The notes beneath the pieces were generated by a model that had not been told where the DNA came from, did no database searches, and saw only the letters and a list, made by a program, of their open reading frames with translations. From positions 23,188,001 to 23,252,000 of the forward strand of contig NC_047062.1 of NCBI RefSeq assembly GCF_902459465.1: a DNA stretch of 64,000 bases, given 5' to 3'. Positions 31,736-41,686 of the stretch are shown piece after piece. The number at the start of each line of letters is the position of its first letter. Position 1 is the first letter of the stretch. Origin of the DNA: Asterias rubens (Eukaryota). The translations under genes were made by a program, and so were the position numbers.

Positions 31736-34700
31736 GCATTTCCACCATTCCACCATAAGAGTTTGACCATAATCGAAGCATTGCTGCAGTTAAACATGTT
31801 GTTCATAGTTGTTATGTGAGAGAAAAACAAAGCTCATTGAATTCTAAATGGAATGGTTTATTTGATTTATTTGAGTAAGGTTTTGTCTCTTATCGGTTTT
31901 AAAGTTAGGATTAGAGGCAACTTTTCTGCTATGGTAATTGGTTAACAAATCTTCAAATTCAGTGTGGTCTTCTCTTTGTGGAATGGTGTTGTTTAGATTC
32001 ATAAAATAGATTTATACTTTAGAATAATGGCTATATGGAACATTCCCTTTTGGAGCTTTGTTTGTTTGTTTGCTTGTTGCTGAACTGAACTTTCAGCTTC
32101 AAAAAAGTAACCTAATTAAGTGTAATCAATGCTCATGTTTACAAGAAGGGAATGCACAATGGTAACAATTAGTTGACAAAGAAAAAGTAACCTTGCAAGG
32201 CAGCCATTAGATTTTGTTTTACTTTGAAACTAACGCGAATGAGTTTCATTCTAGTCATCATCATGTTTTTATAGAAAACGTCAAATAAATGCCCATATTA
32301 TTACACACTCATAAAAAGATATATTGGAAGGCAACTTTTTCTATTGGGCGTAATTTTTTACTTTTGTTTTGAAAATTGAATGTTATCCCAAGCACAAATA
32401 TTTCTCAAATTGGTAATACAAAAATTTGTTTTCCATTACTTTTGATAACTTTTAAATTTGGATGTTACCAATGTGTAAGTCTTTCTTCAGGGAAGTATTA
32501 CCAGTATGATTATTTCCAGAATGTTTATTTTGACTGTGTTGGATCAATGTATAAAAACAAACTAAAATGTCAATTTGTTTTTACTTATTCCTCATCCGAA
32601 CATTGCTTGTACGATGCTGGTACATGCATAAGTTCCTTGTTTCCGCCTTCAAACACATGCCGTTACCTTGATTTAATAGCATACAAATTTATAATAACTT
32701 ACGTAATCGGACATAAATTTTAAAGAGATTCATTTTAATAAAGATTTGCTCAATCTTGGTTCAGGCTATACATGTTATAACAGAATGCTGTACCAACTTT
32801 AATAGTACCTTTCCTTTAATCTACTGCACCCATTAAAGTCATGGCCGTTTCTTTTCAATGGGAATCAAGTTACCCTCCAGGTCCTTATGAATGTTTTGGG
32901 TTTTTTTCTTCTGGCTTTTTCATTATTGCACAGACAATTTCCGGTCTGAGCGTCGCCAATTTCCTCTGCTAAAGGAAAGCAAAGGTGTTGACACTGTAAT
33001 GGGATATTTGCCAGTATAATAATTTGAGTCCTGTATGTGTGTGTAGATTTGGCAAGCCTCAAGTTTAGGCGCCTATTTGTTTGCTTCTCCGCTGGACAAA
33101 CTATTTACCATGAAATCCATGCCTATTATATCCTAATTATTTTGTCAACCAGTGACATTTTAGGAGAGTGTTTTACTCAAAGAGTGGAAGCAGGAATGAA
33201 TTGCAGGATAACATTTTTGTTTATTTATGGAAAATTAGGATCAACTTCCAATGAACTATTTTCTTGAGCCTTCTTGTGTTAGAAACCCTTTCTGGTAAAA
33301 CCAGCTTGTTCTAATATCAGTGCAACCGAACTGAGGCTGGTTGGCCAAAATGGCCTGAACCCAATTTCATTGGAAATTGGAAATATTGCTTAAACAAGTT
33401 CAGCACAATTATACAGGATTACCAGGAAACCAGCCACATTTAGTACATATCAAATTATATTTGGCTGATATTTTGATTCTGGTAAGCATAATGTTGTTGT
33501 GCTTGGCTACTTTTTGTGCTTAAGCAGCTCTATGAAATAGGGCCCCGTGTTGGGACGAGTAAACAACATTGCTTAGAATACAAACAAAGGTCACAGAGCC
33601 CAGGACATATAGATGATGGCAGCATGCTTCCCAGGTCTTGTGCTTTCTTGAGGTGGTTTTGCAAGTAAAATTCAGGTAGACAAACTGACCACCCTTTAGC
33701 AACTTAAAATCTGGTTATTTTCAAACTCCCCGCATCGATTTCTGCTTGCAGGCTTTTCCCTCCCACTTTATGGCGTTTAGTTGCAGAAATACTGTTAAAA
33801 GGTGAATAACTTACCCCCTGTTAAATGTAGCAAGGTGTCAAAAGTAAAAGACTTGGCAGGTCTGTTGCCCTTAAGAAATCGAAGGATCTGGTTGTGTTTA
33901 TGGGGATGCATGTGAAATGCCTATTGGCAGCTGGTGACACTCTAATTGTTGATTTGTATCCAGGTACATGCAATTTCTTTTTGAGGGTAAGGGGTAAAGA
34001 AGGATGATCAAATAATGTAGGATGCATCAAATTTAATTTAAGGGGATTTGTTTGGTTCCATTCAACACTTTAAAAAGGGGGGCTTTCTTTAAGAAATTGA
34101 TCTAATCATTTAATGTCTTTTAAACAAAAGAAGTCAGGCCTCACCAAATGTATGTGTGGTCTTTGAATTGTACATACATGTATGTTATGATTATGAACAT
34201 TCACTTAAAGTATGTATTTTTTGTGATGAATGTGTGAAGTCATAATAATTTGATAGTCGTTAAAGATGTCTCTTTTCACTTATTGTGTGGAAAATAGTTT
34301 GGTGTCTTTAAAGTACATTCTTTTTGAAGATACTTGTTTCAGTAGGATTTTTCCAGGATAATTTAACTTACCGAGTTGGTCTAGTGGTAGAACTGTTTGC
34401 CTTCGGAGTCGGAGGTCCCTGGTTCAAATCCCACGTGAGGTCTACAATCTTGTTGTTACAACTTAGATATCAAAATTTGTTGGGGGACAGAAATTTATTA
34501 GTAGGATTTTTCCAGGATATGTTAACTGACCGAGTTGGTCTAGTGGTAGAACTGTTTGCCTCCGGAGTCGGAGGTCCCTGGTTCAAATCCCGGGTGAGGT
34601 CTTAAATTTTGTTGTTACAACTTTGATTTCTAAATTTGTTGAGGGACGGAAATTTATTAGTCGGATTTTTCCAGGATATTTTAACTGACCGAGTTGGTGT

Positions 34701-35303
34701 AGTGGTAGAACTGTTTGCCTCTGGAGTCGGAGGTCCCTGGTTCAAATCCCAGGTGAGGTCGACAATTTTGTTGTTACAACTTAGATTTCAAAATTTGTTG
34801 GGGGACCGAAATTTATGAGTAAGATTTTTCCAGGATATTTTAACTGACCGAGTTGGTCTAGTGGTAGAACTGTTTGCCTCCGGAGTCGGAGGTCCCTGCT
34901 TCTAATCCTGGGTGAGTTCTTAAATTATGTTGTTACAACTTCGATTTCTAAATTTGTTGGGGGACGGAAATTTATTAGTAGGATTTTCCAGGATATTTTA
35001 ACTGACCGAGTTGGTCTAGTGGTAGAACTGTTTGCCTCCGGAGTCTGAGGTCCCTGGTTCAAATCCTAGGTGAGGTCTACAATTTTGTTATTACAACTTA
35101 GATTTCTAAATTTGTTGGGGACGGAAATTGATTAGTAGGATTTTTCCAAGATTTTTTAACTGACCGAGTTGGTCTAGTGGTAGAACTGTTTGCCTCCGGA
35201 GTCGGAGGTCCCTGGTTCAAATCCCAGGTGAGGTTTGCAATTTTGTTGTTACAACTTAGGTTTCAAAATTTGTTGGGGGACGGAAATTATTAGTAGGATT
35301 TTC

Positions 35304-35784
35304 NNNNNNNNNNNNNNNNNNNNNNNNNNNNNNNNNNNNNNNNNNNNNNNNNNNNNNNNNNNNNNNNNNNNNNNNNNNNNNNNNNNNNNNNNNNNNNNNN
35401 NNNNNNNNNNNNNNNNNNNNNNNNNNNNNNNNNNNNNNNNNNNNNNNNNNNNNNNNNNNNNNNNNNNNNNNNNNNNNNNNNNNNNNNNNNNNNNNNNNNN
35501 NNNNNNNNNNNNNNNNNNNNNNNNNNNNNNNNNNNNNNNNNNNNNNNNNNNNNNNNNNNNNNNNNNNNNNNNNNNNNNNNNNNNNNNNNNNNNNNNNNNN
35601 NNNNNNNNNNNNNNNNNNNNNNNNNNNNNNNNNNNNNNNNNNNNNNNNNNNNNNNNNNNNNNNNNNNNNNNNNNNNNNNNNNNNNNNNNNNNNNNNNNNN
35701 NNNNNNNNNNNNNNNNNNNNNNNNNNNNNNNNNNNNNNNNNNNNNNNNNNNNNNNNNNNNNNNNNNNNNNNNNNNNNNNNNNNN
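35304..35784. other. Assembly gap (481 N) inside the 159-bp array
   Basis: Run of N. True array copy number is therefore unknown. Confidence 1.
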
Positions 35785-38700
35785 CAGGATATTTTCTAGT
35801 GGTAGAACTGTTTGCCTCTGGAGTTGGAGGTCCCTGGTTCAAATTCCAGGTGAGGTCTACAATTTTGTTGTTACAACTTAGATTTCAAAACTTGTTGGGG
35901 GACGGAAATTTATTAGTAGGATTTTTCCAGGATATTTTAACTGACCGAGTTGGTCTAGTGGTAGAACTGTTTGCCTCCGGAGTAGGAGGTCCCTGGTTCA
36001 AGTCCTGGGTGAGGTCTACAATTTTGTTGTTACAACTTAGGTTTCAAAAATTGTTGGGGGACGGAAATTTATTAGTAGGATTTTTCCAGGATATTTTAAC
36101 TGACCGAGTTGGTCTAGTGGTGGAACTGTTTGCCTCCGGAGTCTGAGGTCCCTGGTTCAAATCCCAGGTGAGGTCTACAGTTTTGTTGTTACAACTTAGA
36201 TTTCTAAATTTGTTGGGGACGGAAATTTATTAGTAGGATTTTTCCAAGATGTTTTAACTGACCGAGTTGGTCTAGTGGTAGAACTGTTTGCCTCCGGAGT
36301 CGGAGGTCCCTGGTTCAAATCCCAGGTGAGGTCTGCAATTTTGTTGTTACAACTTAGGTTTCAAAATTTGTTGGGGGACGGAAATTTATTAGTAGGATTT
36401 TTCCAGGATATTTTAACTGACTGAGTTGGTCTAGTGGTAGAACTGTTTGCCTCTGGAGTTGGAGGTCCCTGGTTCAAATCCCAGGTGAGGTCTGCAATTT
36501 TGTTGTTACAAGTTAGGTTTCAAAATTTGTTGGGGGACGGAAATTTATTAGTAGGATTTTTCAAGGATATTTTAACTGACCGAGTTGGTCTAGTGGTAGA
36601 ACTGTTTGCCTCATGAGTCGGAGGTTCCCTGGTTCAAATCCCGGGTGAGGTCTCAAATTTTGTTGTTACAACTTAGGTTTCAAAATTGTTGGGGGACGGA
36701 AATTTATTAGTAGGATTTTTCCAGGATATTTTAACTGACCGAGTTGGTCTAGTGGTAGAACTGTTTGCCTCCGGAGTCGGAGGTCCATGGTTAAAATCCT
36801 GGTGAGGTCTACAATTTTGTTGTTACAACTTAGATATCAAAATTTGTTGGGGGACGGAAATTTATTAGTAGGATTTTTCCAGGATATTTTAACTGACCGA
36901 GTTGGTCTAGTGGTAGAACTGTTTGCCTCCGGAGTCGGAGGTCCCTGGTTCAAATCCCAGGTGAGGTCTACAGTTTTGTTGTTACAACTTAGATTTCTAA
37001 ATTTGTTGAGGGACGGAAATTTATTAGTCGGATTTTTCCAGGATATTTTAACTGATCGTGTTGGTCTAGTGGAAGAAGTGTTTGCCTCTGGAGTTGGAGG
37101 TCCCTGGTTCAACTCCCGGGTGATGTCTACAATTTTGTTGTTACACGTTAGATTTCTAAATTTGTCGAGGGACGGAAATTTATTAGTAGGATTTATCCAT
37201 GATATTTTAACTGACTGAGTTGGTCTAGTGGTAGAACTGTTTGCCTCTGGAGTTGGAGGTCCCTGGTTCAAATCCCAGGTGAGGTCTGAAATTTTGTTGT
37301 TACAACTTAGGTTTAAAAATTTGTTGGGGGACGGAAATTTATTAGTAGGATTTTTCCAGGATATTTTAACTGACCGAGTTGGTCTAGTGGTAGAACTGTT
37401 TGCCTCCGGAGTCGGAGGTCCCTGGTTCAAATCCCGGGTGAGGTCTCAAATTTTGTTGTTACAACTTAGATATCAAAATTTGTTGAGGGACAGAAATTTA
37501 TTAGTCGGATTTTTCCAGGATATTTTAACTGATCGTGTTGGTCTAGTGGTAGAACTGTTTGCCTCCGGAGTCGGAGGTCCCTGGTTCAAATCCCAGGTGA
37601 GGTCTGCAATTTTGTTGTTACAACTTAGATTTCAAAATTTGTTGGGGGACGGAAATTTATTAGTAGGATTTTTCCAGGATATTTTAACTGACCGAGTTGG
37701 TCTAGTGGTAGAACTGTTTGCCTCCGGAGTCGGAGGTCCCTGGTTCAAATCCCAGGTGAGGTCTACAATTTTGTTGTTACAACTTAGATTTATAAATTTG
37801 TTGAGGGACGGAAATTTATTAGTAGGATTTTTCCAGGATATTTTAACTGACTGGGTTGGTCTAGTGGTAGAACTGTTTGCCTCATGAGTCGGAGGTCCCT
37901 GGTTCAAATCCAGGTGAGGTCTACAATTTTGTTGTTACAACTTAGATTTCTAAATTTGTTGAGGGACGGAAATTTATTAGTCGGATTTTTCCAGGATATT
38001 TTAACTGATCGTGTTGGTCTAGTGGTAGAAGTGTTTGCCTCTGGAGTCGGAGGTCCCTGGTTCAAATCCCAGGTGAGGTCTCAAATTTTGTTGTTACAAC
38101 TTAGATATCAAAATTTGTTGAGGGACGGAAATTTATTAGTAGGATTTTTCCAGGATATTTTAACTGACCGAGTTGGTCTAGTGGTAGAACTGTTTGCCTC
38201 CGGAGTCGGAGGTCCCTGGTTCAAATCCCAGGTGAGGTCTGCATTTTGTTGTTACAACTTAGGTTTCAAAATTTGTTGGGGGACGGAAATTTATTAGTAG
38301 GATTTTTCCAGGATATTTTAACTGACCGAGTTGGTCTAGTGGTAGAACTGTTTGCCTCCGGAGTCGGAGGTCCCTGGTTCAAATCCCAGGTGAGGTCTAC
38401 AATTTTGTTGTTACAACTTAGATTTCAAAATTTGTTGGGGGACGGAAATTTATTAGTAGGATTTTTCCAGGATATTTTAACTGACCGAGTTGGTCTAGTG
38501 GTAGAACTGTTTGCCTCCGGAGTCGGAGGTCCCTGGTTCAAATCCCTGGGTGAGGTCTACAATTTTGTTGTTACAACTTAGGTTTCAAAAATTGTTGGGG
38601 GACGGAAATTTATTAGTAGGATTTTTCCAGGATATTTTAACTGACCGAGTTGGTCTAGTGGTAGAACTGTTTGCCTCCGGAGTCGGAGGTCCCTGGTTCA

Positions 38701-39437
38701 AATCCCAGGTGAGGTCTACAGTTTTGTTGTTACAACTTAGATTTCTAAATTTGTTGAGGGACGGAAATTTATTAGTAGGATTTATCCATGATATTTTAAC
38801 TGACCGAGTTGGTCTAGTGGTAGAACTGTTTGCCTCTGGAGTTGGAGGTCCCTGGTTCAAATCCCAGGTGAGGTCTGAAATTTTGTTGTTACAACTTAGG
38901 TTTAAAAATTTGTTGGGGGACGGAAATTTATTAGTAGGATTTTTCCAGGATATTTTAACTGACTGAGTTGGTCTAGTGGTAGAACTGTTTGCCTCCGGAG
39001 TCGGAGGTCCCTGGTTCAAATCCCGGGTGAGGTCTCAAATTTTGTTGTTACAACTTAGATATCAAAATTTGTTGAGGGACAGAAATTTATTAGTCGGATT
39101 TTTCCAGGATATTTTAACTGATCGTGTTGGTCTAGTGGAAGAAGTGTTTGCCTCTGGAGTTGGAGGTCCCTGGTTCAAATCCCGGGTGAGGTCTACAATT
39201 TTGTTGTTACAACTTAGATTTCTAAATTTGTTGAGGGACGGAAATTTATTAGTAGGATTTATCCATGATATTTTAACTGACCGAGTTGGTCTAGTGGTAG
39301 AACTGTTCGCCTCTGGAGTCGGAGGTTCCTGGTTCAAATCCCAGGTGAGGTCTCAAATTTTGTTGTTACAACTTAGATTTCAAAACTTGTTGGGGGACGG
39401 AAATTTATTAGTAGGATTTTTCCAGGATATTTTAACT

Positions 39438-39511
39438 GACCGAGTTGGTCTAGTGGTAGAACTGTTTGCCTCCGGAGTCGGAGGTCCCTGGTTCAAATCC
39501 CAGGTGAGGTC
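39438..39511 (+). pseudogene. Representative tRNA-like unit of the array (tRNA-Arg-CCG-derived, imperfect cloverleaf)
   Basis: D-loop AGTGGTA, anticodon loop CT-CCG-GA, T loop TTCAAAT, acceptor ends GACC/GGTC. There are two acceptor-stem mismatches, a weak anticodon stem and a bulged C in the T stem, so it is unlikely to be a working tRNA. Confidence 0.6.
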
Positions 39512-40129
39512 TACAATTTTGTTGTTACAACTTAGATATCAAAATTTGTTAGGGGACGGAAATTTATTAGTAGGATTTTTCCAGGATATCTCAACTAATC
39601 GTGTTGGCCTCACAGTGCACTAAGCTGCGCTAAGGCTGAGATTTCAAAGTTCAGAGCTGAAGTGTTAGAAATTCTGGGCAAACTTGATGTGTTATCAGAG
39701 TTAGTGGTACGTGCAATCATGCTAAGTTGGGGATGTATCTAGACATTGGTGAATGGGCTTTAAACTATGGTTCTGACTGGTGCATGCAAAAGATACCTGC
39801 ATTTTTATAAGCGGAAGGCTTCCATGTTAGTAAAAAAAGGTTATTTCCTAAATGCTGTATATATATGTCAGCCTTGAAAACTTCAAAAGGACTAGGTACC
39901 CGGATAAGTGGCCAAAACAGAGGATATAAAGGCTTGGGTTTGTTTTTAACACGCCATATTAGGACTGTTGGAAAGTGAATGTAAAATCATGCAACTTGCA
40001 ACCACTTTACTACACGGCAGTTTATATCATCAAACAACATTCTAAAGATACAATGTCATCCATGATGGGAATGTTATTTTCACGGTAGTAGTACCTTTCA
40101 CAAAGGCACTACTAACTTGGGACTAGTCC

Positions 40130-40497
40130 TTAAAGGAACACGTTGCCTTGGATCGGTCGTTTGTTATAAAATGCATATGGTTAGAAAGATATTTTAAAAG
40201 TAGAATATAATGATCCACACAAGTATGACTCGAAATTGCGTGGTTTTCCTTTTACCTCGTCGACTAACACGGTCGGCCATTTATGGGAGTCAAATTTTTG
40301 ACTCTGATAAATGACCGACAGTGTTAGTTCGCAAAGTTAAAGGAAAACCACGCAATTTCGAGGAAAAGTTGTGTGGATCGTTATATTCTACTTTTAAAAT
40401 ATCTTTCCAACCATATGCATTTTATAAAAAACGGTTACAATTTACAAACGCTTTTCAAAGACCAACTCGACTGATCCAAGGCAACGTGTTCCTTTAA
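40130..40497. mobile_element. MITE family B copy
   Basis: TTAA-aggaacacgttgccttggatc ... gatccaaggcaacgtgttcct-TTAA; closely similar to 9075-9442. Confidence 0.85.
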
Positions 40498-41686
40498 GAA
40501 GGATGAGTGACTCGTACTCGAGATAAGACTAGTCTTTGTGAATTCAACCCCACGACTTTTAAAACACATTTTGGGATTGTTCAGAAGGGAAAAGAAGCCA
40601 TGTTTCCTGGCAACTTAAAAGGCATACAGTCTGGTGCAAATTGCAGTCAAACTATGCCAGAAACCCCTGAGCTAGCCTTACTTTTTGGGCTGTTATGGCT
40701 CTCTTTTAACAGTGTTCTCATATATTTATTGACCAAACCAACAGCGGACGAGCCGCCAATTACAGGAAAGGATACCAAAAAAAACAATAAGAAATATTCA
40801 TATAGCCTATATAAAAACAATCTGATATGTACAAAGAACTATGAAGACTGATGTTAAAGAGAGCCGTAACAACAAAACACTGCAAACAAGGTGGGCTAGG
40901 CTATACCCCTATCTGAGCATGTAGGAAGGAACCTCCATGCCCTGCTGAGCAAGCCCACATACATCTCTCTCATGAAAAGTGCTTTTGGTTCATTTTCCCT
41001 CTTGAATAAAGAGAATTCTCTAGTTTATCTGTTTGGCAAACTGTGTGTGTGTGTGTGTGGGTGTGTCTACCAGTTGAAATGTACTAGTACAAACCAATGA
41101 GGATGTCCAAACAAAATGAGAGCGAAGGGAAGTCCTTGATTTAGCAGGTCAATGTGCGTGTGTGGGAATATGTGAGGGTGGGGAGAGTAGGAGGAAGTGG
41201 GAGGCGGGCAGTGTAAACAAAAATCTCCATCTTCACAAGAAACTAGGCTCCAAACATCCAGTGTAAAAAACCCATAGTCTTCATTAACACAACAAACACA
41301 TTCCTGCATTGCAACACAATTCCCTTGTTTTCTTCAACCCCTTTATTTTTCATGCAGTATTCGAAGAACAAATATTTGTCCTAGTTATTTTCTGAACTTT
41401 GTACAGGTAGGCAAGGTTTACAGAGCAAACATAGGTTGTGTCTTCGTCGCAATCTCCAGCACCATTCCATCACATAAGAATAAATGATGAAGGTTCCAAT
41501 GGCCCCGGGGTCTTTCTATATATTCAACAAATTGTTTTTTCCCACGTCAGGGCCAAGGAAAACACGGCAAACATGCCTCTGTCATGTTTTCTTTTTAGTG
41601 TCCGGGGGATAAAGATGCTGTATTCAGGACCGAAATGAAAAACGGGCATGAAGTTTGATTCACTGGGCAATTACTGATGAAGCCCC

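What the first reader, a model, noticed from the sequence alone, without database searches (positions are those of the whole stretch)
34340..39610. ~5.3-kb tandem array of complete Pol III-type tRNA-like transcription units
Seen: at least 29 head-to-tail 159-bp units. Each has a 74-nt tRNA-shaped head with an A box (TGGTCTAGTGG), a B box (GGTTCAAATCC) and a TTTT run about 5 nt downstream, then an ~85-bp AT-rich spacer. The head resembles eukaryotic tRNA-Arg(CCG) (GACC.AG...GCCTCCGGAG) but has acceptor- and anticodon-stem mismatches and no SINE body or tail. Established: A/B boxes recruit TFIIIC/Pol III, and clustered tDNA or B-box sites can act as chromatin barriers. Inference: this is a tRNA-derived satellite that could produce a small tRNA-like ncRNA or tRF precursor, or form a TFIIIC-bound insulator between the orphan cluster and C1orf198/PUS10. 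This is the best candidate here for an undescribed system.
Basis: partly seen in the sequence, partly recalled or inferred. Interest (0 to 1): 0.8.

Follow-up and report, generated by a model that had tools for sequence, protein, structure and literature searches.

The report
tRNA-derived 159-bp satellite DNA array
This is one decaying array of a low-copy satellite DNA family whose repeat unit grew out of a degenerate tRNA-like sequence; the kind is already known from amphibians and reptiles, and nothing here shows that it makes an RNA or insulates the neighbouring genes.

Summary
Window 34341-39607 holds 30 head-to-tail units of 158-160 bp, split by an N gap. Each unit has a 74-nt tRNA-like head with A box, B box and a T4 run, then an AT-rich spacer.

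It is not a locus-specific system. The same 159-bp satellite forms arrays of 6 to 107 units on five other contigs. Diverged 153-bp and about 162-bp subfamilies and old solo fragments lie on more. Flanks are unrelated and arrays stop at different phases of the unit.

The heads are not working tRNAs:
- Rfam tRNA reports only one unit, at 19.1 bits (cut-off 29).
- The acceptor stem has two adjacent mismatches.
- The "anticodon" is split CCG/CTG across copies.
- Assignment to tRNA-Arg(CCG) is not specific.

The A and B boxes are only weakly protected. They carry about 0.7 times the spacer's variant load, although the A box/D arm is invariant between the three subfamily consensuses. Two raw RNA-seq runs give 0-4x depth on the satellite. 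Small RNA could not be tested.

Best reading: a tRNA-derived satellite, analogous to newt PolIII/TAN, frog Rana/polIII and Xenopus OAX. Residual Pol III or TFIIIC activity is possible but unproven. The scan noted a different tRNA-like-head satellite 5.3 Mb upstream on this chromosome (s1-150745).

The parts
34341..35303 (+). Left block of the array: 6 units of 158-159 bp, tRNA-like heads on the + strand
   Evidence: TRF period 159, 6.1 copies; anchors at 34386-35179; alignment of units
35304..35784 (.). Assembly gap (481 N) inside the array. Both sides are the same repeat on the same strand and in register (unit position 13 | 14). The number of missing units is unknown.
35785..39607 (+). Right block: 24 units. 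The first carries a 16-bp deletion of unit positions 25-40. The last is a partial unit (39569-39607) that fades into unique sequence.
   Evidence: TRF; anchors 35801-39455; boundary read
38296..38454 (+). Reference unit, identical to this array's consensus (159 bp)
   Evidence: 100% matches elsewhere in the genome
38324..38397 (+). 74-nt tRNA-like head (pseudo-tRNA). Acceptor stem pairs 5-68 and 6-67 are mismatched; one mismatch each in the D stem and the anticodon stem. The minimum-energy fold is not a cloverleaf.
   Evidence: Rfam alignment; fold z = -1.6; ARAGORN calls it only at 90% threshold
38332..38342 (+). A box TGGTCTAGTGG, inside an 18-nt D-arm block that is invariant in all three subfamily consensuses
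38376..38386 (+). B box GGTTCAAATCC (10 of 11 positions invariant between subfamilies)
38403..38406 (+). T4 run 5 nt after the head (T5 and T6 in subfamilies B and C): a possible Pol III terminator
38441..38459 (+). Most conserved spacer block, GACGGAAATTTATTAGTAG. Its AT core lies 37 to 29 nt upstream of the next head. A TATA-like role is a post hoc inference.

Best explanation
The array is one locus of a low-abundance, multi-locus satellite DNA family.

Origin (inferred). A tRNA-like pseudogene, already defective in its acceptor and anticodon stems, was tandemly amplified together with about 85 bp of adjoining AT-rich sequence.

Spread (inferred). Pieces of arrays reached other chromosomes, as shown by permuted, phase-shifted ends and unrelated flanks. 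The route was probably re-insertion of excised or circular multimers, or ectopic exchange.

Current state (shown). Arrays now evolve by local duplication and homogenisation. This window's array is one of the older, poorly homogenised copies. Neighbouring units differ by about 6%, and its CpG sites, including the 'anticodon', are decaying about 3.4 times faster than its other sites.

Function. The heads are not functional tRNA genes. The A box, B box and T-run persist mainly by descent, perhaps with weak constraint, so individual units may still bind TFIIIC or support some Pol III transcription. No specific function at this locus is indicated.
For: Tandem structure.

Family-wide distribution. 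318 heads genome-wide match within 3 mismatches. Arrays hold 30, 61, 107, 41, 6 and 51 or more units on C1, C10, C12, C17, C23 and C65. A 153-bp subfamily lies on C28 and at a second C17 site, and a ~162-bp subfamily on C18. Old mini-arrays and solo fragments lie at a second C18 site (duplicated on unplaced contig C145), on C3, C11 and C13, and at C17:4.08 Mb.

Spread as DNA fragments. Flanks are unrelated and array ends fall at different unit phases. The C23 array is 5.8 units inserted inside a different 67-bp satellite. The C11 solo copy runs from unit position 51 round to position 45, a permuted monomer and not a retroposed head.

Homogenisation. Mean pairwise distance is 2.5-2.9% within and between C10 and C12, 6.3% within C1 and 8.4% within C17.

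Not functional tRNAs. Rfam reports only one unit, at 19.1 bits against a cut-off of 29, and no tRNA hit at E <= 10 in about 135 further units. ARAGORN finds none in the window. Folds are not cloverleaves, z = -0.7 to -1.6. The anticodon's middle base is C in 131 units and T in 156.

No dispersed SINE-like copies in about 150 kb of sampled sequence.

No long RNA. Depth is 0-4x on the satellite in two raw RNA-seq runs (1.9 and 1.6 Gb read), against 1000-3700x on a nearby dispersed repeat.

Precedents: PolIII/TAN, Rana/polIII, Hy/polIII, OAX and squamate SINE-derived satellites (PMC10702118, PMC12054243).
Against: The promoter-like parts are somewhat better kept than the rest. The A box/D arm is 18 of 18 invariant and the B box 10 of 11 invariant among the three subfamily consensuses, against 61 of 88 non-head columns. 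A+B against non-head gives Fisher p = 0.02. Within families the A and B boxes carry 0.72 times the distinct variants per site (one-sided p = 0.014).

The T-run and an upstream AT block are also conserved.

A derived C-to-A change that restores an anticodon-stem pair predominates in the youngest arrays, and ARAGORN then calls the head a tRNA at default settings.

Several metatranscriptome libraries contain the unit; one has a 189-nt unitig at depth 68, although carried-over DNA is not excluded.

Standard RNA-seq would miss a 75-80-nt Pol III product, and the two raw runs carry a different coded organism label from the best DNA holder.
Confidence: 0.7

Rival explanations
1. Active Pol III or TFIIIC satellite. 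Each unit is a working type-2 Pol III unit, or at least a TFIIIC-bound B-box site. The arrays would then produce an ~80-nt tRNA-like ncRNA or tRF precursor, or act as TFIIIC-dependent chromatin boundaries or organisers. Selection would act on the promoter boxes, not on tRNA function.
For: The A and B boxes match consensus with normal spacing, and a T-run is conserved (T4, T5, T6 in the three subfamilies). The A box/D arm is invariant and the B box nearly so between subfamilies, while the acceptor stem is as variable as the spacer (10 of 14 columns invariant, 0.71 against 0.69) and the anticodon arm lies in between (16 of 20, 0.80). Variant load in the boxes is 0.72 times non-head. An AT block 37 to 29 nt upstream of the head is conserved. 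The unit is present in metatranscriptome assemblies from three studies. PolIII/TAN is transcribed in vitro (PMC10702118), and a human tRNA tandem repeat has been proposed as a boundary element (PMC4041453).
Against: The constraint is weak and borderline, and partly post hoc. Old solo copies have lost their boxes. Raw RNA-seq shows almost no reads and no start or end pile-ups. Metatranscriptome contigs cannot separate RNA from DNA. Tandem tRNA genes in Arabidopsis are epigenetically silenced (PMC7544208). Faster decay at CpG sites would fit germline methylation, but methylation was not measured. Unrelated flanks and variable array sizes argue against a locus-specific boundary role.
Confidence: 0.2
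2. A cluster of functional tRNA-Arg(CCG) genes amplified in tandem, like the genuine tRNA gene arrays elsewhere in this genome.
For: Real tandem tRNA clusters exist in this genome at C13:8.54 Mb and C12:17.87-17.91 Mb, scoring 66-74 bits. ARAGORN at default threshold calls the TAGG variant of the head tRNA-Arg(CCG) or tRNA-Gln(CTG).
Against: The only unit Rfam reports scores 19.1 bits, against 29 for the cut-off and 66-74 for real genes. Two adjacent acceptor-stem mismatches are present in all three subfamilies. The anticodon is split between CCG and CTG, which a functional isoacceptor family should not tolerate (inference). The head is only 65% identical to the genome's real tRNA-Arg(CCG).
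Confidence: 0.02
3. A SINE-derived satellite: the unit is a piece of a dispersed tRNA-derived SINE that was tandemised, as in squamates.
For: The genome is very rich in tRNA-like sequences: 76,930 first-look candidates. Another satellite built from a different tRNA-like head lies 5.3 Mb upstream. SINE-to-satellite transitions are documented (PMC10702118).
Against: No dispersed copy of head or spacer was found in about 150 kb of sampled sequence outside arrays. Solo copies are circularly permuted fragments of the satellite unit, without tails or head-first starts. The genome-wide search lists only the best matches, so a diverged parent SINE cannot be excluded.
Confidence: 0.06
4. A tandem-repeat protein-coding exon: 159 bp is 53 codons, and one frame of the consensus unit is open.
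For: ORFs of 90-300 aa run through the array. Frame 2 of the consensus unit has no stop codon, read directly from the unit.
Against: Units of 158 and 160 bp shift the frame, and ORFs break about every 4 units or fewer. Pfam gives no match. There are essentially no RNA-seq reads. An AT-rich 53-codon unit has roughly a 1 in 5 chance of an open frame among six frames (my estimate).
Confidence: 0.01

Closest known systems
PolIII/TAN tandem repeat family of the newt Cynops pyrrhogaster (Nagahashi et al. 1991, as described in PMC10702118 and PMC12054243)
   Same: A tandemly repeated genomic family whose unit contains a tRNA-related sequence with Pol III promoter boxes. No matching SINE is known.
   Different: Its unit is about 360 nt against 159 here, and it was proposed to derive from tRNA-Glu. 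It lives in an amphibian rather than a marine invertebrate. Its in vitro Pol III transcription has been shown, which is untested here. No sequence comparison was possible, so this is an analogue, not a demonstrated homologue.
Rana/polIII (~250 nt) and Hy/polIII (~200 nt) tandem families of frogs and salamanders; Xenopus OAX/'satellite I' (PMC10702118)
   Same: Satellite-like tandem repeats with a tRNA-similar segment. The tRNA similarity is modest (64% over 64 nt in Rana/polIII), comparable with the 60-72% found here.
   Different: Those families can be very abundant, up to 10% of the genome. This one holds roughly 380-400 assembled units, about 60 kb or about 0.015% of the assembly (my arithmetic). 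Hy/polIII lacks a B box, whereas both boxes are present here.
SINE-derived satellites of scaled reptiles (PMC10702118)
   Same: Short tandem units (67-215 nt) that include tRNA-related head segments with a promoter box. Many loci exist, with few to many monomers.
   Different: Those have an identified parent SINE (Squam1-3). No parent SINE was found here, and the solo copies are permuted satellite fragments.
Tandem tRNA gene clusters: the Arabidopsis Ser/Tyr and Cys clusters (PMC7544208, PMC10701932) and the human 1q23.3 tRNA VNTR (PMC4041453)
   Same: Head-to-tail repetition of Pol III A/B-box units. Such clusters can be silenced, or proposed as boundary elements.
   Different: Those units carry bona fide tRNA genes. 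These heads fail tRNA models and have a polymorphic anticodon.

Membership tests
Functional tRNA gene | Scores above the Rfam tRNA (RF00005) gathering threshold of 29 bits | tested here: not met
   Only one unit of the array was reported, at 19.1 bits. No tRNA hit at E <= 10 in four further loci holding about 135 units. Real tRNA genes of this genome score 37-74 bits.
Functional tRNA gene | Paired 7-bp acceptor stem and a stable cloverleaf | tested here: not met
   Pairs 5-68 and 6-67 are mismatched in all three subfamily consensuses. The minimum-energy fold is not a cloverleaf, z = -0.7 to -1.6.
Functional tRNA gene | Anticodon conserved among copies | tested here: not met
   The middle base is C in 131 units and T in 156 of 294. 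In this array it is C in 19, T in 8 and A in 2.
Pol III type-2 transcription unit | A box, B box at tRNA-like spacing, and a downstream run of at least 4 T | tested here: met
   TGGTCTAGTGG at head positions 9-19, GGTTCAAATCC at 53-63, TTTT starting 6 nt after the head. All three features are conserved in subfamilies B and C.
Pol III type-2 transcription unit | Actual Pol III transcription or TFIIIC occupancy | not testable with these tools
   Only long-RNA libraries were available, at 0-4x depth with no start or end pile-ups. There were no small-RNA or ChIP data.
Satellite DNA | Long head-to-tail arrays of one monomer at several loci, with within-array homogenisation | tested here: met
   Arrays of 6-107 units on six contigs, plus two diverged subfamilies. 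Nearest neighbours lie mostly within the same array for C1, C10, C17 and C65.
Satellite DNA | Heterochromatic, centromeric or telomeric location | not testable with these tools
   Only assembly coordinates are available. Arrays of 6 or more units lie at 0.37-0.69 of contig length.
SINE or SINE-derived satellite | A dispersed parent SINE sharing head and body, with tails or target-site duplications | tested here: inconclusive
   None found in about 150 kb of sampled sequence. Solo copies are permuted fragments. The genome-wide listing is capped, so a diverged parent is not excluded.
tDNA/TFIIIC chromatin insulator | Specific, conserved placement between differently regulated domains, with TFIIIC binding | tested here: inconclusive
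   Placement is not locus-specific: the same satellite occurs at ten or more places with unrelated flanks. TFIIIC binding and synteny in relatives are not testable here.

The most novel reading that the evidence does not exclude
The satellite is kept for its Pol III/TFIIIC-recruiting parts rather than as a tRNA. The A box/D arm, B box, T-run and an upstream AT block persist through three subfamilies while the acceptor stem drifts as fast as the spacer and the anticodon arm is intermediate. The arrays, which sit in the central third of several chromosomes of this marine animal, would then act as TFIIIC-bound chromatin organisers or as the source of an ~80-nt tRNA-like RNA.
Probability: 0.15. 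Interest if true: 0.6.

Novelty: new member of a known kind. Interest (0 to 1): 0.3.

Why it matters
The finding documents, in a marine invertebrate genome, the same route from a Pol III gene to a satellite that is known from amphibians and squamates. It comes with an unusually clear picture of spread: permuted fragments, an insertion into another satellite, and three subfamilies.

It also warns annotators. These units can be called tRNA-Arg or tRNA-Gln by ARAGORN at default settings, and they yield 90-300-aa ORF artefacts. If the weak conservation of the promoter boxes reflects real TFIIIC or Pol III use, the family would be a tractable natural array for studying Pol III elements as chromatin organisers. 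That remains unproven.

Tried and rejected
- **Functional tRNA array.** Rejected by Rfam, ARAGORN, folding and the polymorphic anticodon.
- **Specific tRNA-Arg(CCG) origin.** The genome's true tRNA-Arg(CCG) was found at C3:1.106 Mb. It is 65% identical to the head. The 20 other sampled tRNA genes (Cys, Asn, Lys, Ile and Thr) are 60-72% identical, with Cys highest at 72%. The source tRNA is therefore not assignable.
- **Array carried inside a transposon.** Flanks of six arrays were compared and share nothing.
- **Regular higher-order repeat in this array.** None; only a few scattered duplicated units, for example a 2-unit block at lag 10.
- **Coding repeat.** Rejected.
- **Expression.** Read laying on two raw RNA-seq runs and two metatranscriptome assemblies gave no support for long transcripts. 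The metatranscriptome unitigs cannot distinguish RNA from DNA.
- **Naming the organism.** An attempt through a protein atlas look-up and a paper search led nowhere. From run metadata it is a marine animal. My guess of a sea star rests on memory of assembly size only and is not used as evidence.
- **Complete list of family loci.** Not obtained. Several pattern searches were capped at about 100 listed rows. The count of 318 heads is consistent with subfamilies A, B and C together.


Full report
**1. Observation**

Tandem Repeats Finder reports a 159-bp period at 34341-35302 (6.1 copies, 91% matches) and at 35795-39607 (24.0 copies, 93% matches), with no indels. An 18-nt anchor inside the head occurs 30 times at spacings of 158-160 bp. 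The units align cleanly, and unit 38296-38454 equals the array consensus. Each unit has:
- a 28-nt leader;
- a 74-nt tRNA-like head with A box TGGTCTAGTGG and B box GGTTCAAATCC;
- TTTT starting 6 nt after the head;
- an AT-rich trailer.

**2. The gap**

The gap (481 N, 35304-35784) lies inside the array. The left edge stops at unit position 13 and the right edge starts at position 14, on the same strand, so the two sides are in register. The first unit after the gap has a 16-bp deletion that removes the 5' acceptor half and the start of the A box. The gap length is an estimate, so the true unit number is unknown. I did not try to fill it.

**3. The heads are not working tRNAs**

- ARAGORN finds no tRNA in the window.
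- Rfam's tRNA model reports a single unit at 19.1 bits, below the 29-bit cut-off. Genuine tRNA genes of this genome score 37-74 bits.
- The tRNA model reported no hit at E <= 10 in about 135 units in four other loci.
- The Rfam alignment shows two adjacent acceptor-stem mismatches and one mismatch each in the D and anticodon stems.
- The minimum-energy fold is not a cloverleaf and is no more stable than shuffles, z = -0.7 to -1.6.
- The 'anticodon' is not conserved. Across 294 units of the 159-bp family its middle base is C in 131 and T in 156. In this array it is C in 19, T in 8 and A in 2.
- Variation in the heads is concentrated on CpG sites. CpG positions diverge 3.4 times faster than others in this array and 6.5 times faster family-wide.
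- ARAGORN at default threshold does call one derived variant as tRNA-Arg(CCG) or tRNA-Gln(CTG). This TAGG variant restores one anticodon-stem pair and dominates the arrays on C10, C12 and C65. The ancestral TCGG form that dominates this window is called only at 90% threshold, and subfamilies B and C are not called in register.

**4. It is a multi-locus satellite family**

The window is C1:23188001-23252000 of a 417.6-Mb assembly in 150 contigs.

*159-bp subfamily (A).* A 54-nt head pattern with up to 3 mismatches matches 318 times genome-wide. I fetched arrays with these head counts:

| Contig | Heads | Note |
|---|---|---|
| C1 | 30 | this window |
| C10 | 61 | 9.378-9.388 Mb |
| C12 | 107 | 6.923-6.940 Mb |
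| C17 | 41 | 6.641-6.648 Mb |
| C23 | 6 | 5.817 Mb |
| C65 | 51 | runs to the contig end |

*Diverged relatives*:
- a 153-bp subfamily (B) on C28 (42 copies, to the contig end) and at C17:5.829-5.833 Mb (26 copies), 80-84% identical to A;
- a ~162-bp subfamily (C) at C18:5.044-5.046 Mb, 75-80% identical;
- old mini-arrays at C18:4.43 Mb (duplicated on C145), C3:5.55 Mb and C17:4.08 Mb;
- solo fragments on C11 and C13.

In total this is roughly 380-400 assembled units, about 60 kb (my arithmetic). That is a lower bound, because one gap and two contig ends fall inside arrays.

**5. How it spreads and evolves**

- The flanks of the six 159-bp arrays share nothing, and the arrays begin and end at different unit phases. 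The repeat is therefore not the internal part of a transposon.
- The C23 array is 5.8 units inserted into an unrelated 67-bp satellite. It starts at the B box and ends 5 bp before the next B box.
- The C11 solo copy runs from unit position 51 round to position 45.
- Such circularly permuted, nearly integral pieces fit re-insertion of excised or circular multimers, or ectopic exchange. They do not fit retroposition of a Pol III transcript. This mechanism is an inference.
- Mean pairwise distances are 2.5-2.9% within and between C10 and C12 (young, near-identical arrays), 6.3% within this array and 8.4% within C17.
- This array has no regular higher-order repeat, only a few duplicated units. It is a relatively old, weakly homogenised member.

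**6. Source of the head**

The genome's true tRNA-Arg(CCG) (C3:1.106 Mb, called by ARAGORN and followed by a long T-run) is 65% identical to the head. Twenty other tRNA genes, of five other specificities, are 60-72% identical; tRNA-Cys is highest at 72%. The shared GCCTCCGGAG decamer is suggestive, but the parent tRNA cannot be assigned. All three subfamilies share the acceptor-stem defects, so the common ancestor was already a pseudo-tRNA. No dispersed SINE-like copy of head or spacer appears in about 150 kb of sampled non-array sequence.

**7. Are the promoter boxes protected?**

| Comparison | A + B boxes | Non-head | Result |
|---|---|---|---|
| Distinct variants per site, 159-bp family | 1.95 | 2.54 | ratio 0.77 |
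| Distinct variants per site, 153-bp family | 0.50 | 0.81 | ratio 0.62 |
| Both families combined | | | ratio 0.72, one-sided p = 0.014 |
| Mean divergence | 1.1-1.7% | 3.5% | |
| Sites invariant across the three consensuses | 21 of 22 | 61 of 85 | Fisher p = 0.02 |

- A per-site rank test on the 159-bp family alone was not significant, p = 0.05-0.10.
- Between the three consensuses the 18-nt A-box/D-arm block is fully invariant and the B box is 10 of 11 invariant. Non-head columns are 61 of 88 invariant, and the acceptor stem is no better than spacer at 10 of 14.
- The T-run (T4, T5, T6) is conserved. So is a spacer block whose AT core lies 37 to 29 nt upstream of the head. Reading that block as TATA-like is post hoc.
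- Old solo copies have lost their boxes.
- Overall there is a weak, borderline signal of constraint on the Pol III-type elements, far from what functional genes show.

**8. Expression**

- Unit 31-mers occur in DNA runs under four coded organism labels and in marine metagenomes. They also occur in metatranscriptome assemblies from three studies.
- I laid reads on 39092-40681, which covers three units plus flank. Two raw RNA-seq runs (1.9 and 1.6 Gb read) gave 0-4x depth on the satellite, with no start or end pile-ups. A dispersed hairpin repeat at 40100-40520 reached 1000-3700x in the same runs.
- Two metatranscriptomes each gave one 189-nt unitig (159 + 30, a collapsed tandem repeat) at depths 68 and 4. 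This shows presence but not transcription.
- Caveats: these libraries would not capture a 75-80-nt RNA, and the raw runs carry a different organism code from the best DNA holder.

**9. Comparison with what is known**

Tandem repeat families whose unit contains a tRNA-related, Pol III-type segment have been described. They include PolIII/TAN in the newt (~360 nt, transcribed in vitro), Rana/polIII (~250 nt), Hy/polIII (~200 nt) and Xenopus OAX, together with SINE-derived satellites in squamates (PMC10702118, PMC12054243). Tandem arrays of real tRNA genes can be silenced (PMC7544208) or proposed as boundary elements (PMC4041453).

The present family works like the first group. Membership by homology could not be tested. 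I know of no description of such a family in this animal group, and my full-text searches found none.

**10. Verdict**

- The interpretation as a tRNA-derived satellite is right.
- The claims of a novel system and of a locus-specific insulator are not supported.
- Residual Pol III or TFIIIC competence remains an open minority possibility of about 0.2.

An earlier scan note (s1-150745) described a different satellite built from tRNA-Leu-like heads 5.3 Mb upstream. I confirmed a 167-bp tandem repeat there, though Rfam reported no tRNA match at E <= 1 in that stretch. Building small satellites from tRNA-like heads therefore appears to recur in this genome.

Noticed in passing
window 40100-40520: A dispersed inverted-repeat (hairpin, MITE-like) element just right of the array. 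It collects 1000-3700x depth in two RNA-seq runs, mostly at 90-95% likeness, with many 'opposite strands' joints. Rfam gives only weak miRNA-like hits (MIR2934 at 28 bits against a cut-off of 100).
   Followed up: partly
L038 (C23:5812001-5822000), around 5816.6-5817.6 kb: A different 67-bp satellite hosts a 5.8-unit insertion of the 159-bp satellite. The junctions fall at the B box and 5 bp before the next B box. The 67-bp unit's tail (GGTGTGGGCTACAATTGTTTTTGTTA) resembles the 159-bp unit's head-to-terminator junction.
   Followed up: partly
Rfam reported no tRNA match at E <= 1 in that stretch.
   Followed up: partly
G000 genome-wide; C13:8.536-8.550 Mb, C12:17.870-17.912 Mb; L052-L071: The tRNA model's first look flagged about 76,930 candidates in the genome. 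Genuine tRNA genes form tandem clusters on C13 and C12. A dispersed tRNA-like family with one backbone carries Asn, Lys or Ile anticodons at different loci, which suggests a SINE-like or rapidly mutating tRNA family.
   Followed up: no
window 34324-39623: The unit is 159 bp (53 codons) and one frame of the consensus is open, so mechanical ORF lists show 90-300-aa ORFs across the array. They have no Pfam match and are broken by 158- and 160-bp units.
   Followed up: yes
C1 0.69, C10 0.46, C12 0.38, C17 0.46 and 0.41, C23 0.55, C18 0.37 (fraction of contig length): All arrays of 6 or more units on placed contigs lie in the central 0.37-0.69 of their chromosome-scale contigs. This could reflect pericentromeric or low-recombination regions.
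   Followed up: no
unit positions 32, 64, 70 against 33, 65, 71 in all 159-bp arrays: At CpG sites, C-to-T changes on the head-sense strand far outnumber G-to-A changes (224 unit-sites against 24). The counts are dominated by a few amplified events, so a strand bias in mutation cannot be claimed.
   Followed up: partly
C10, C12 and C65 arrays (L031-L035, L039-L040), unit position 70: A derived C-to-A change (TCGG to TAGG) restores an anticodon-stem pair and pushes the head over ARAGORN's default threshold. It predominates in the youngest, most homogeneous arrays but is rare in this window (1 of 29 units).
   Followed up: partly
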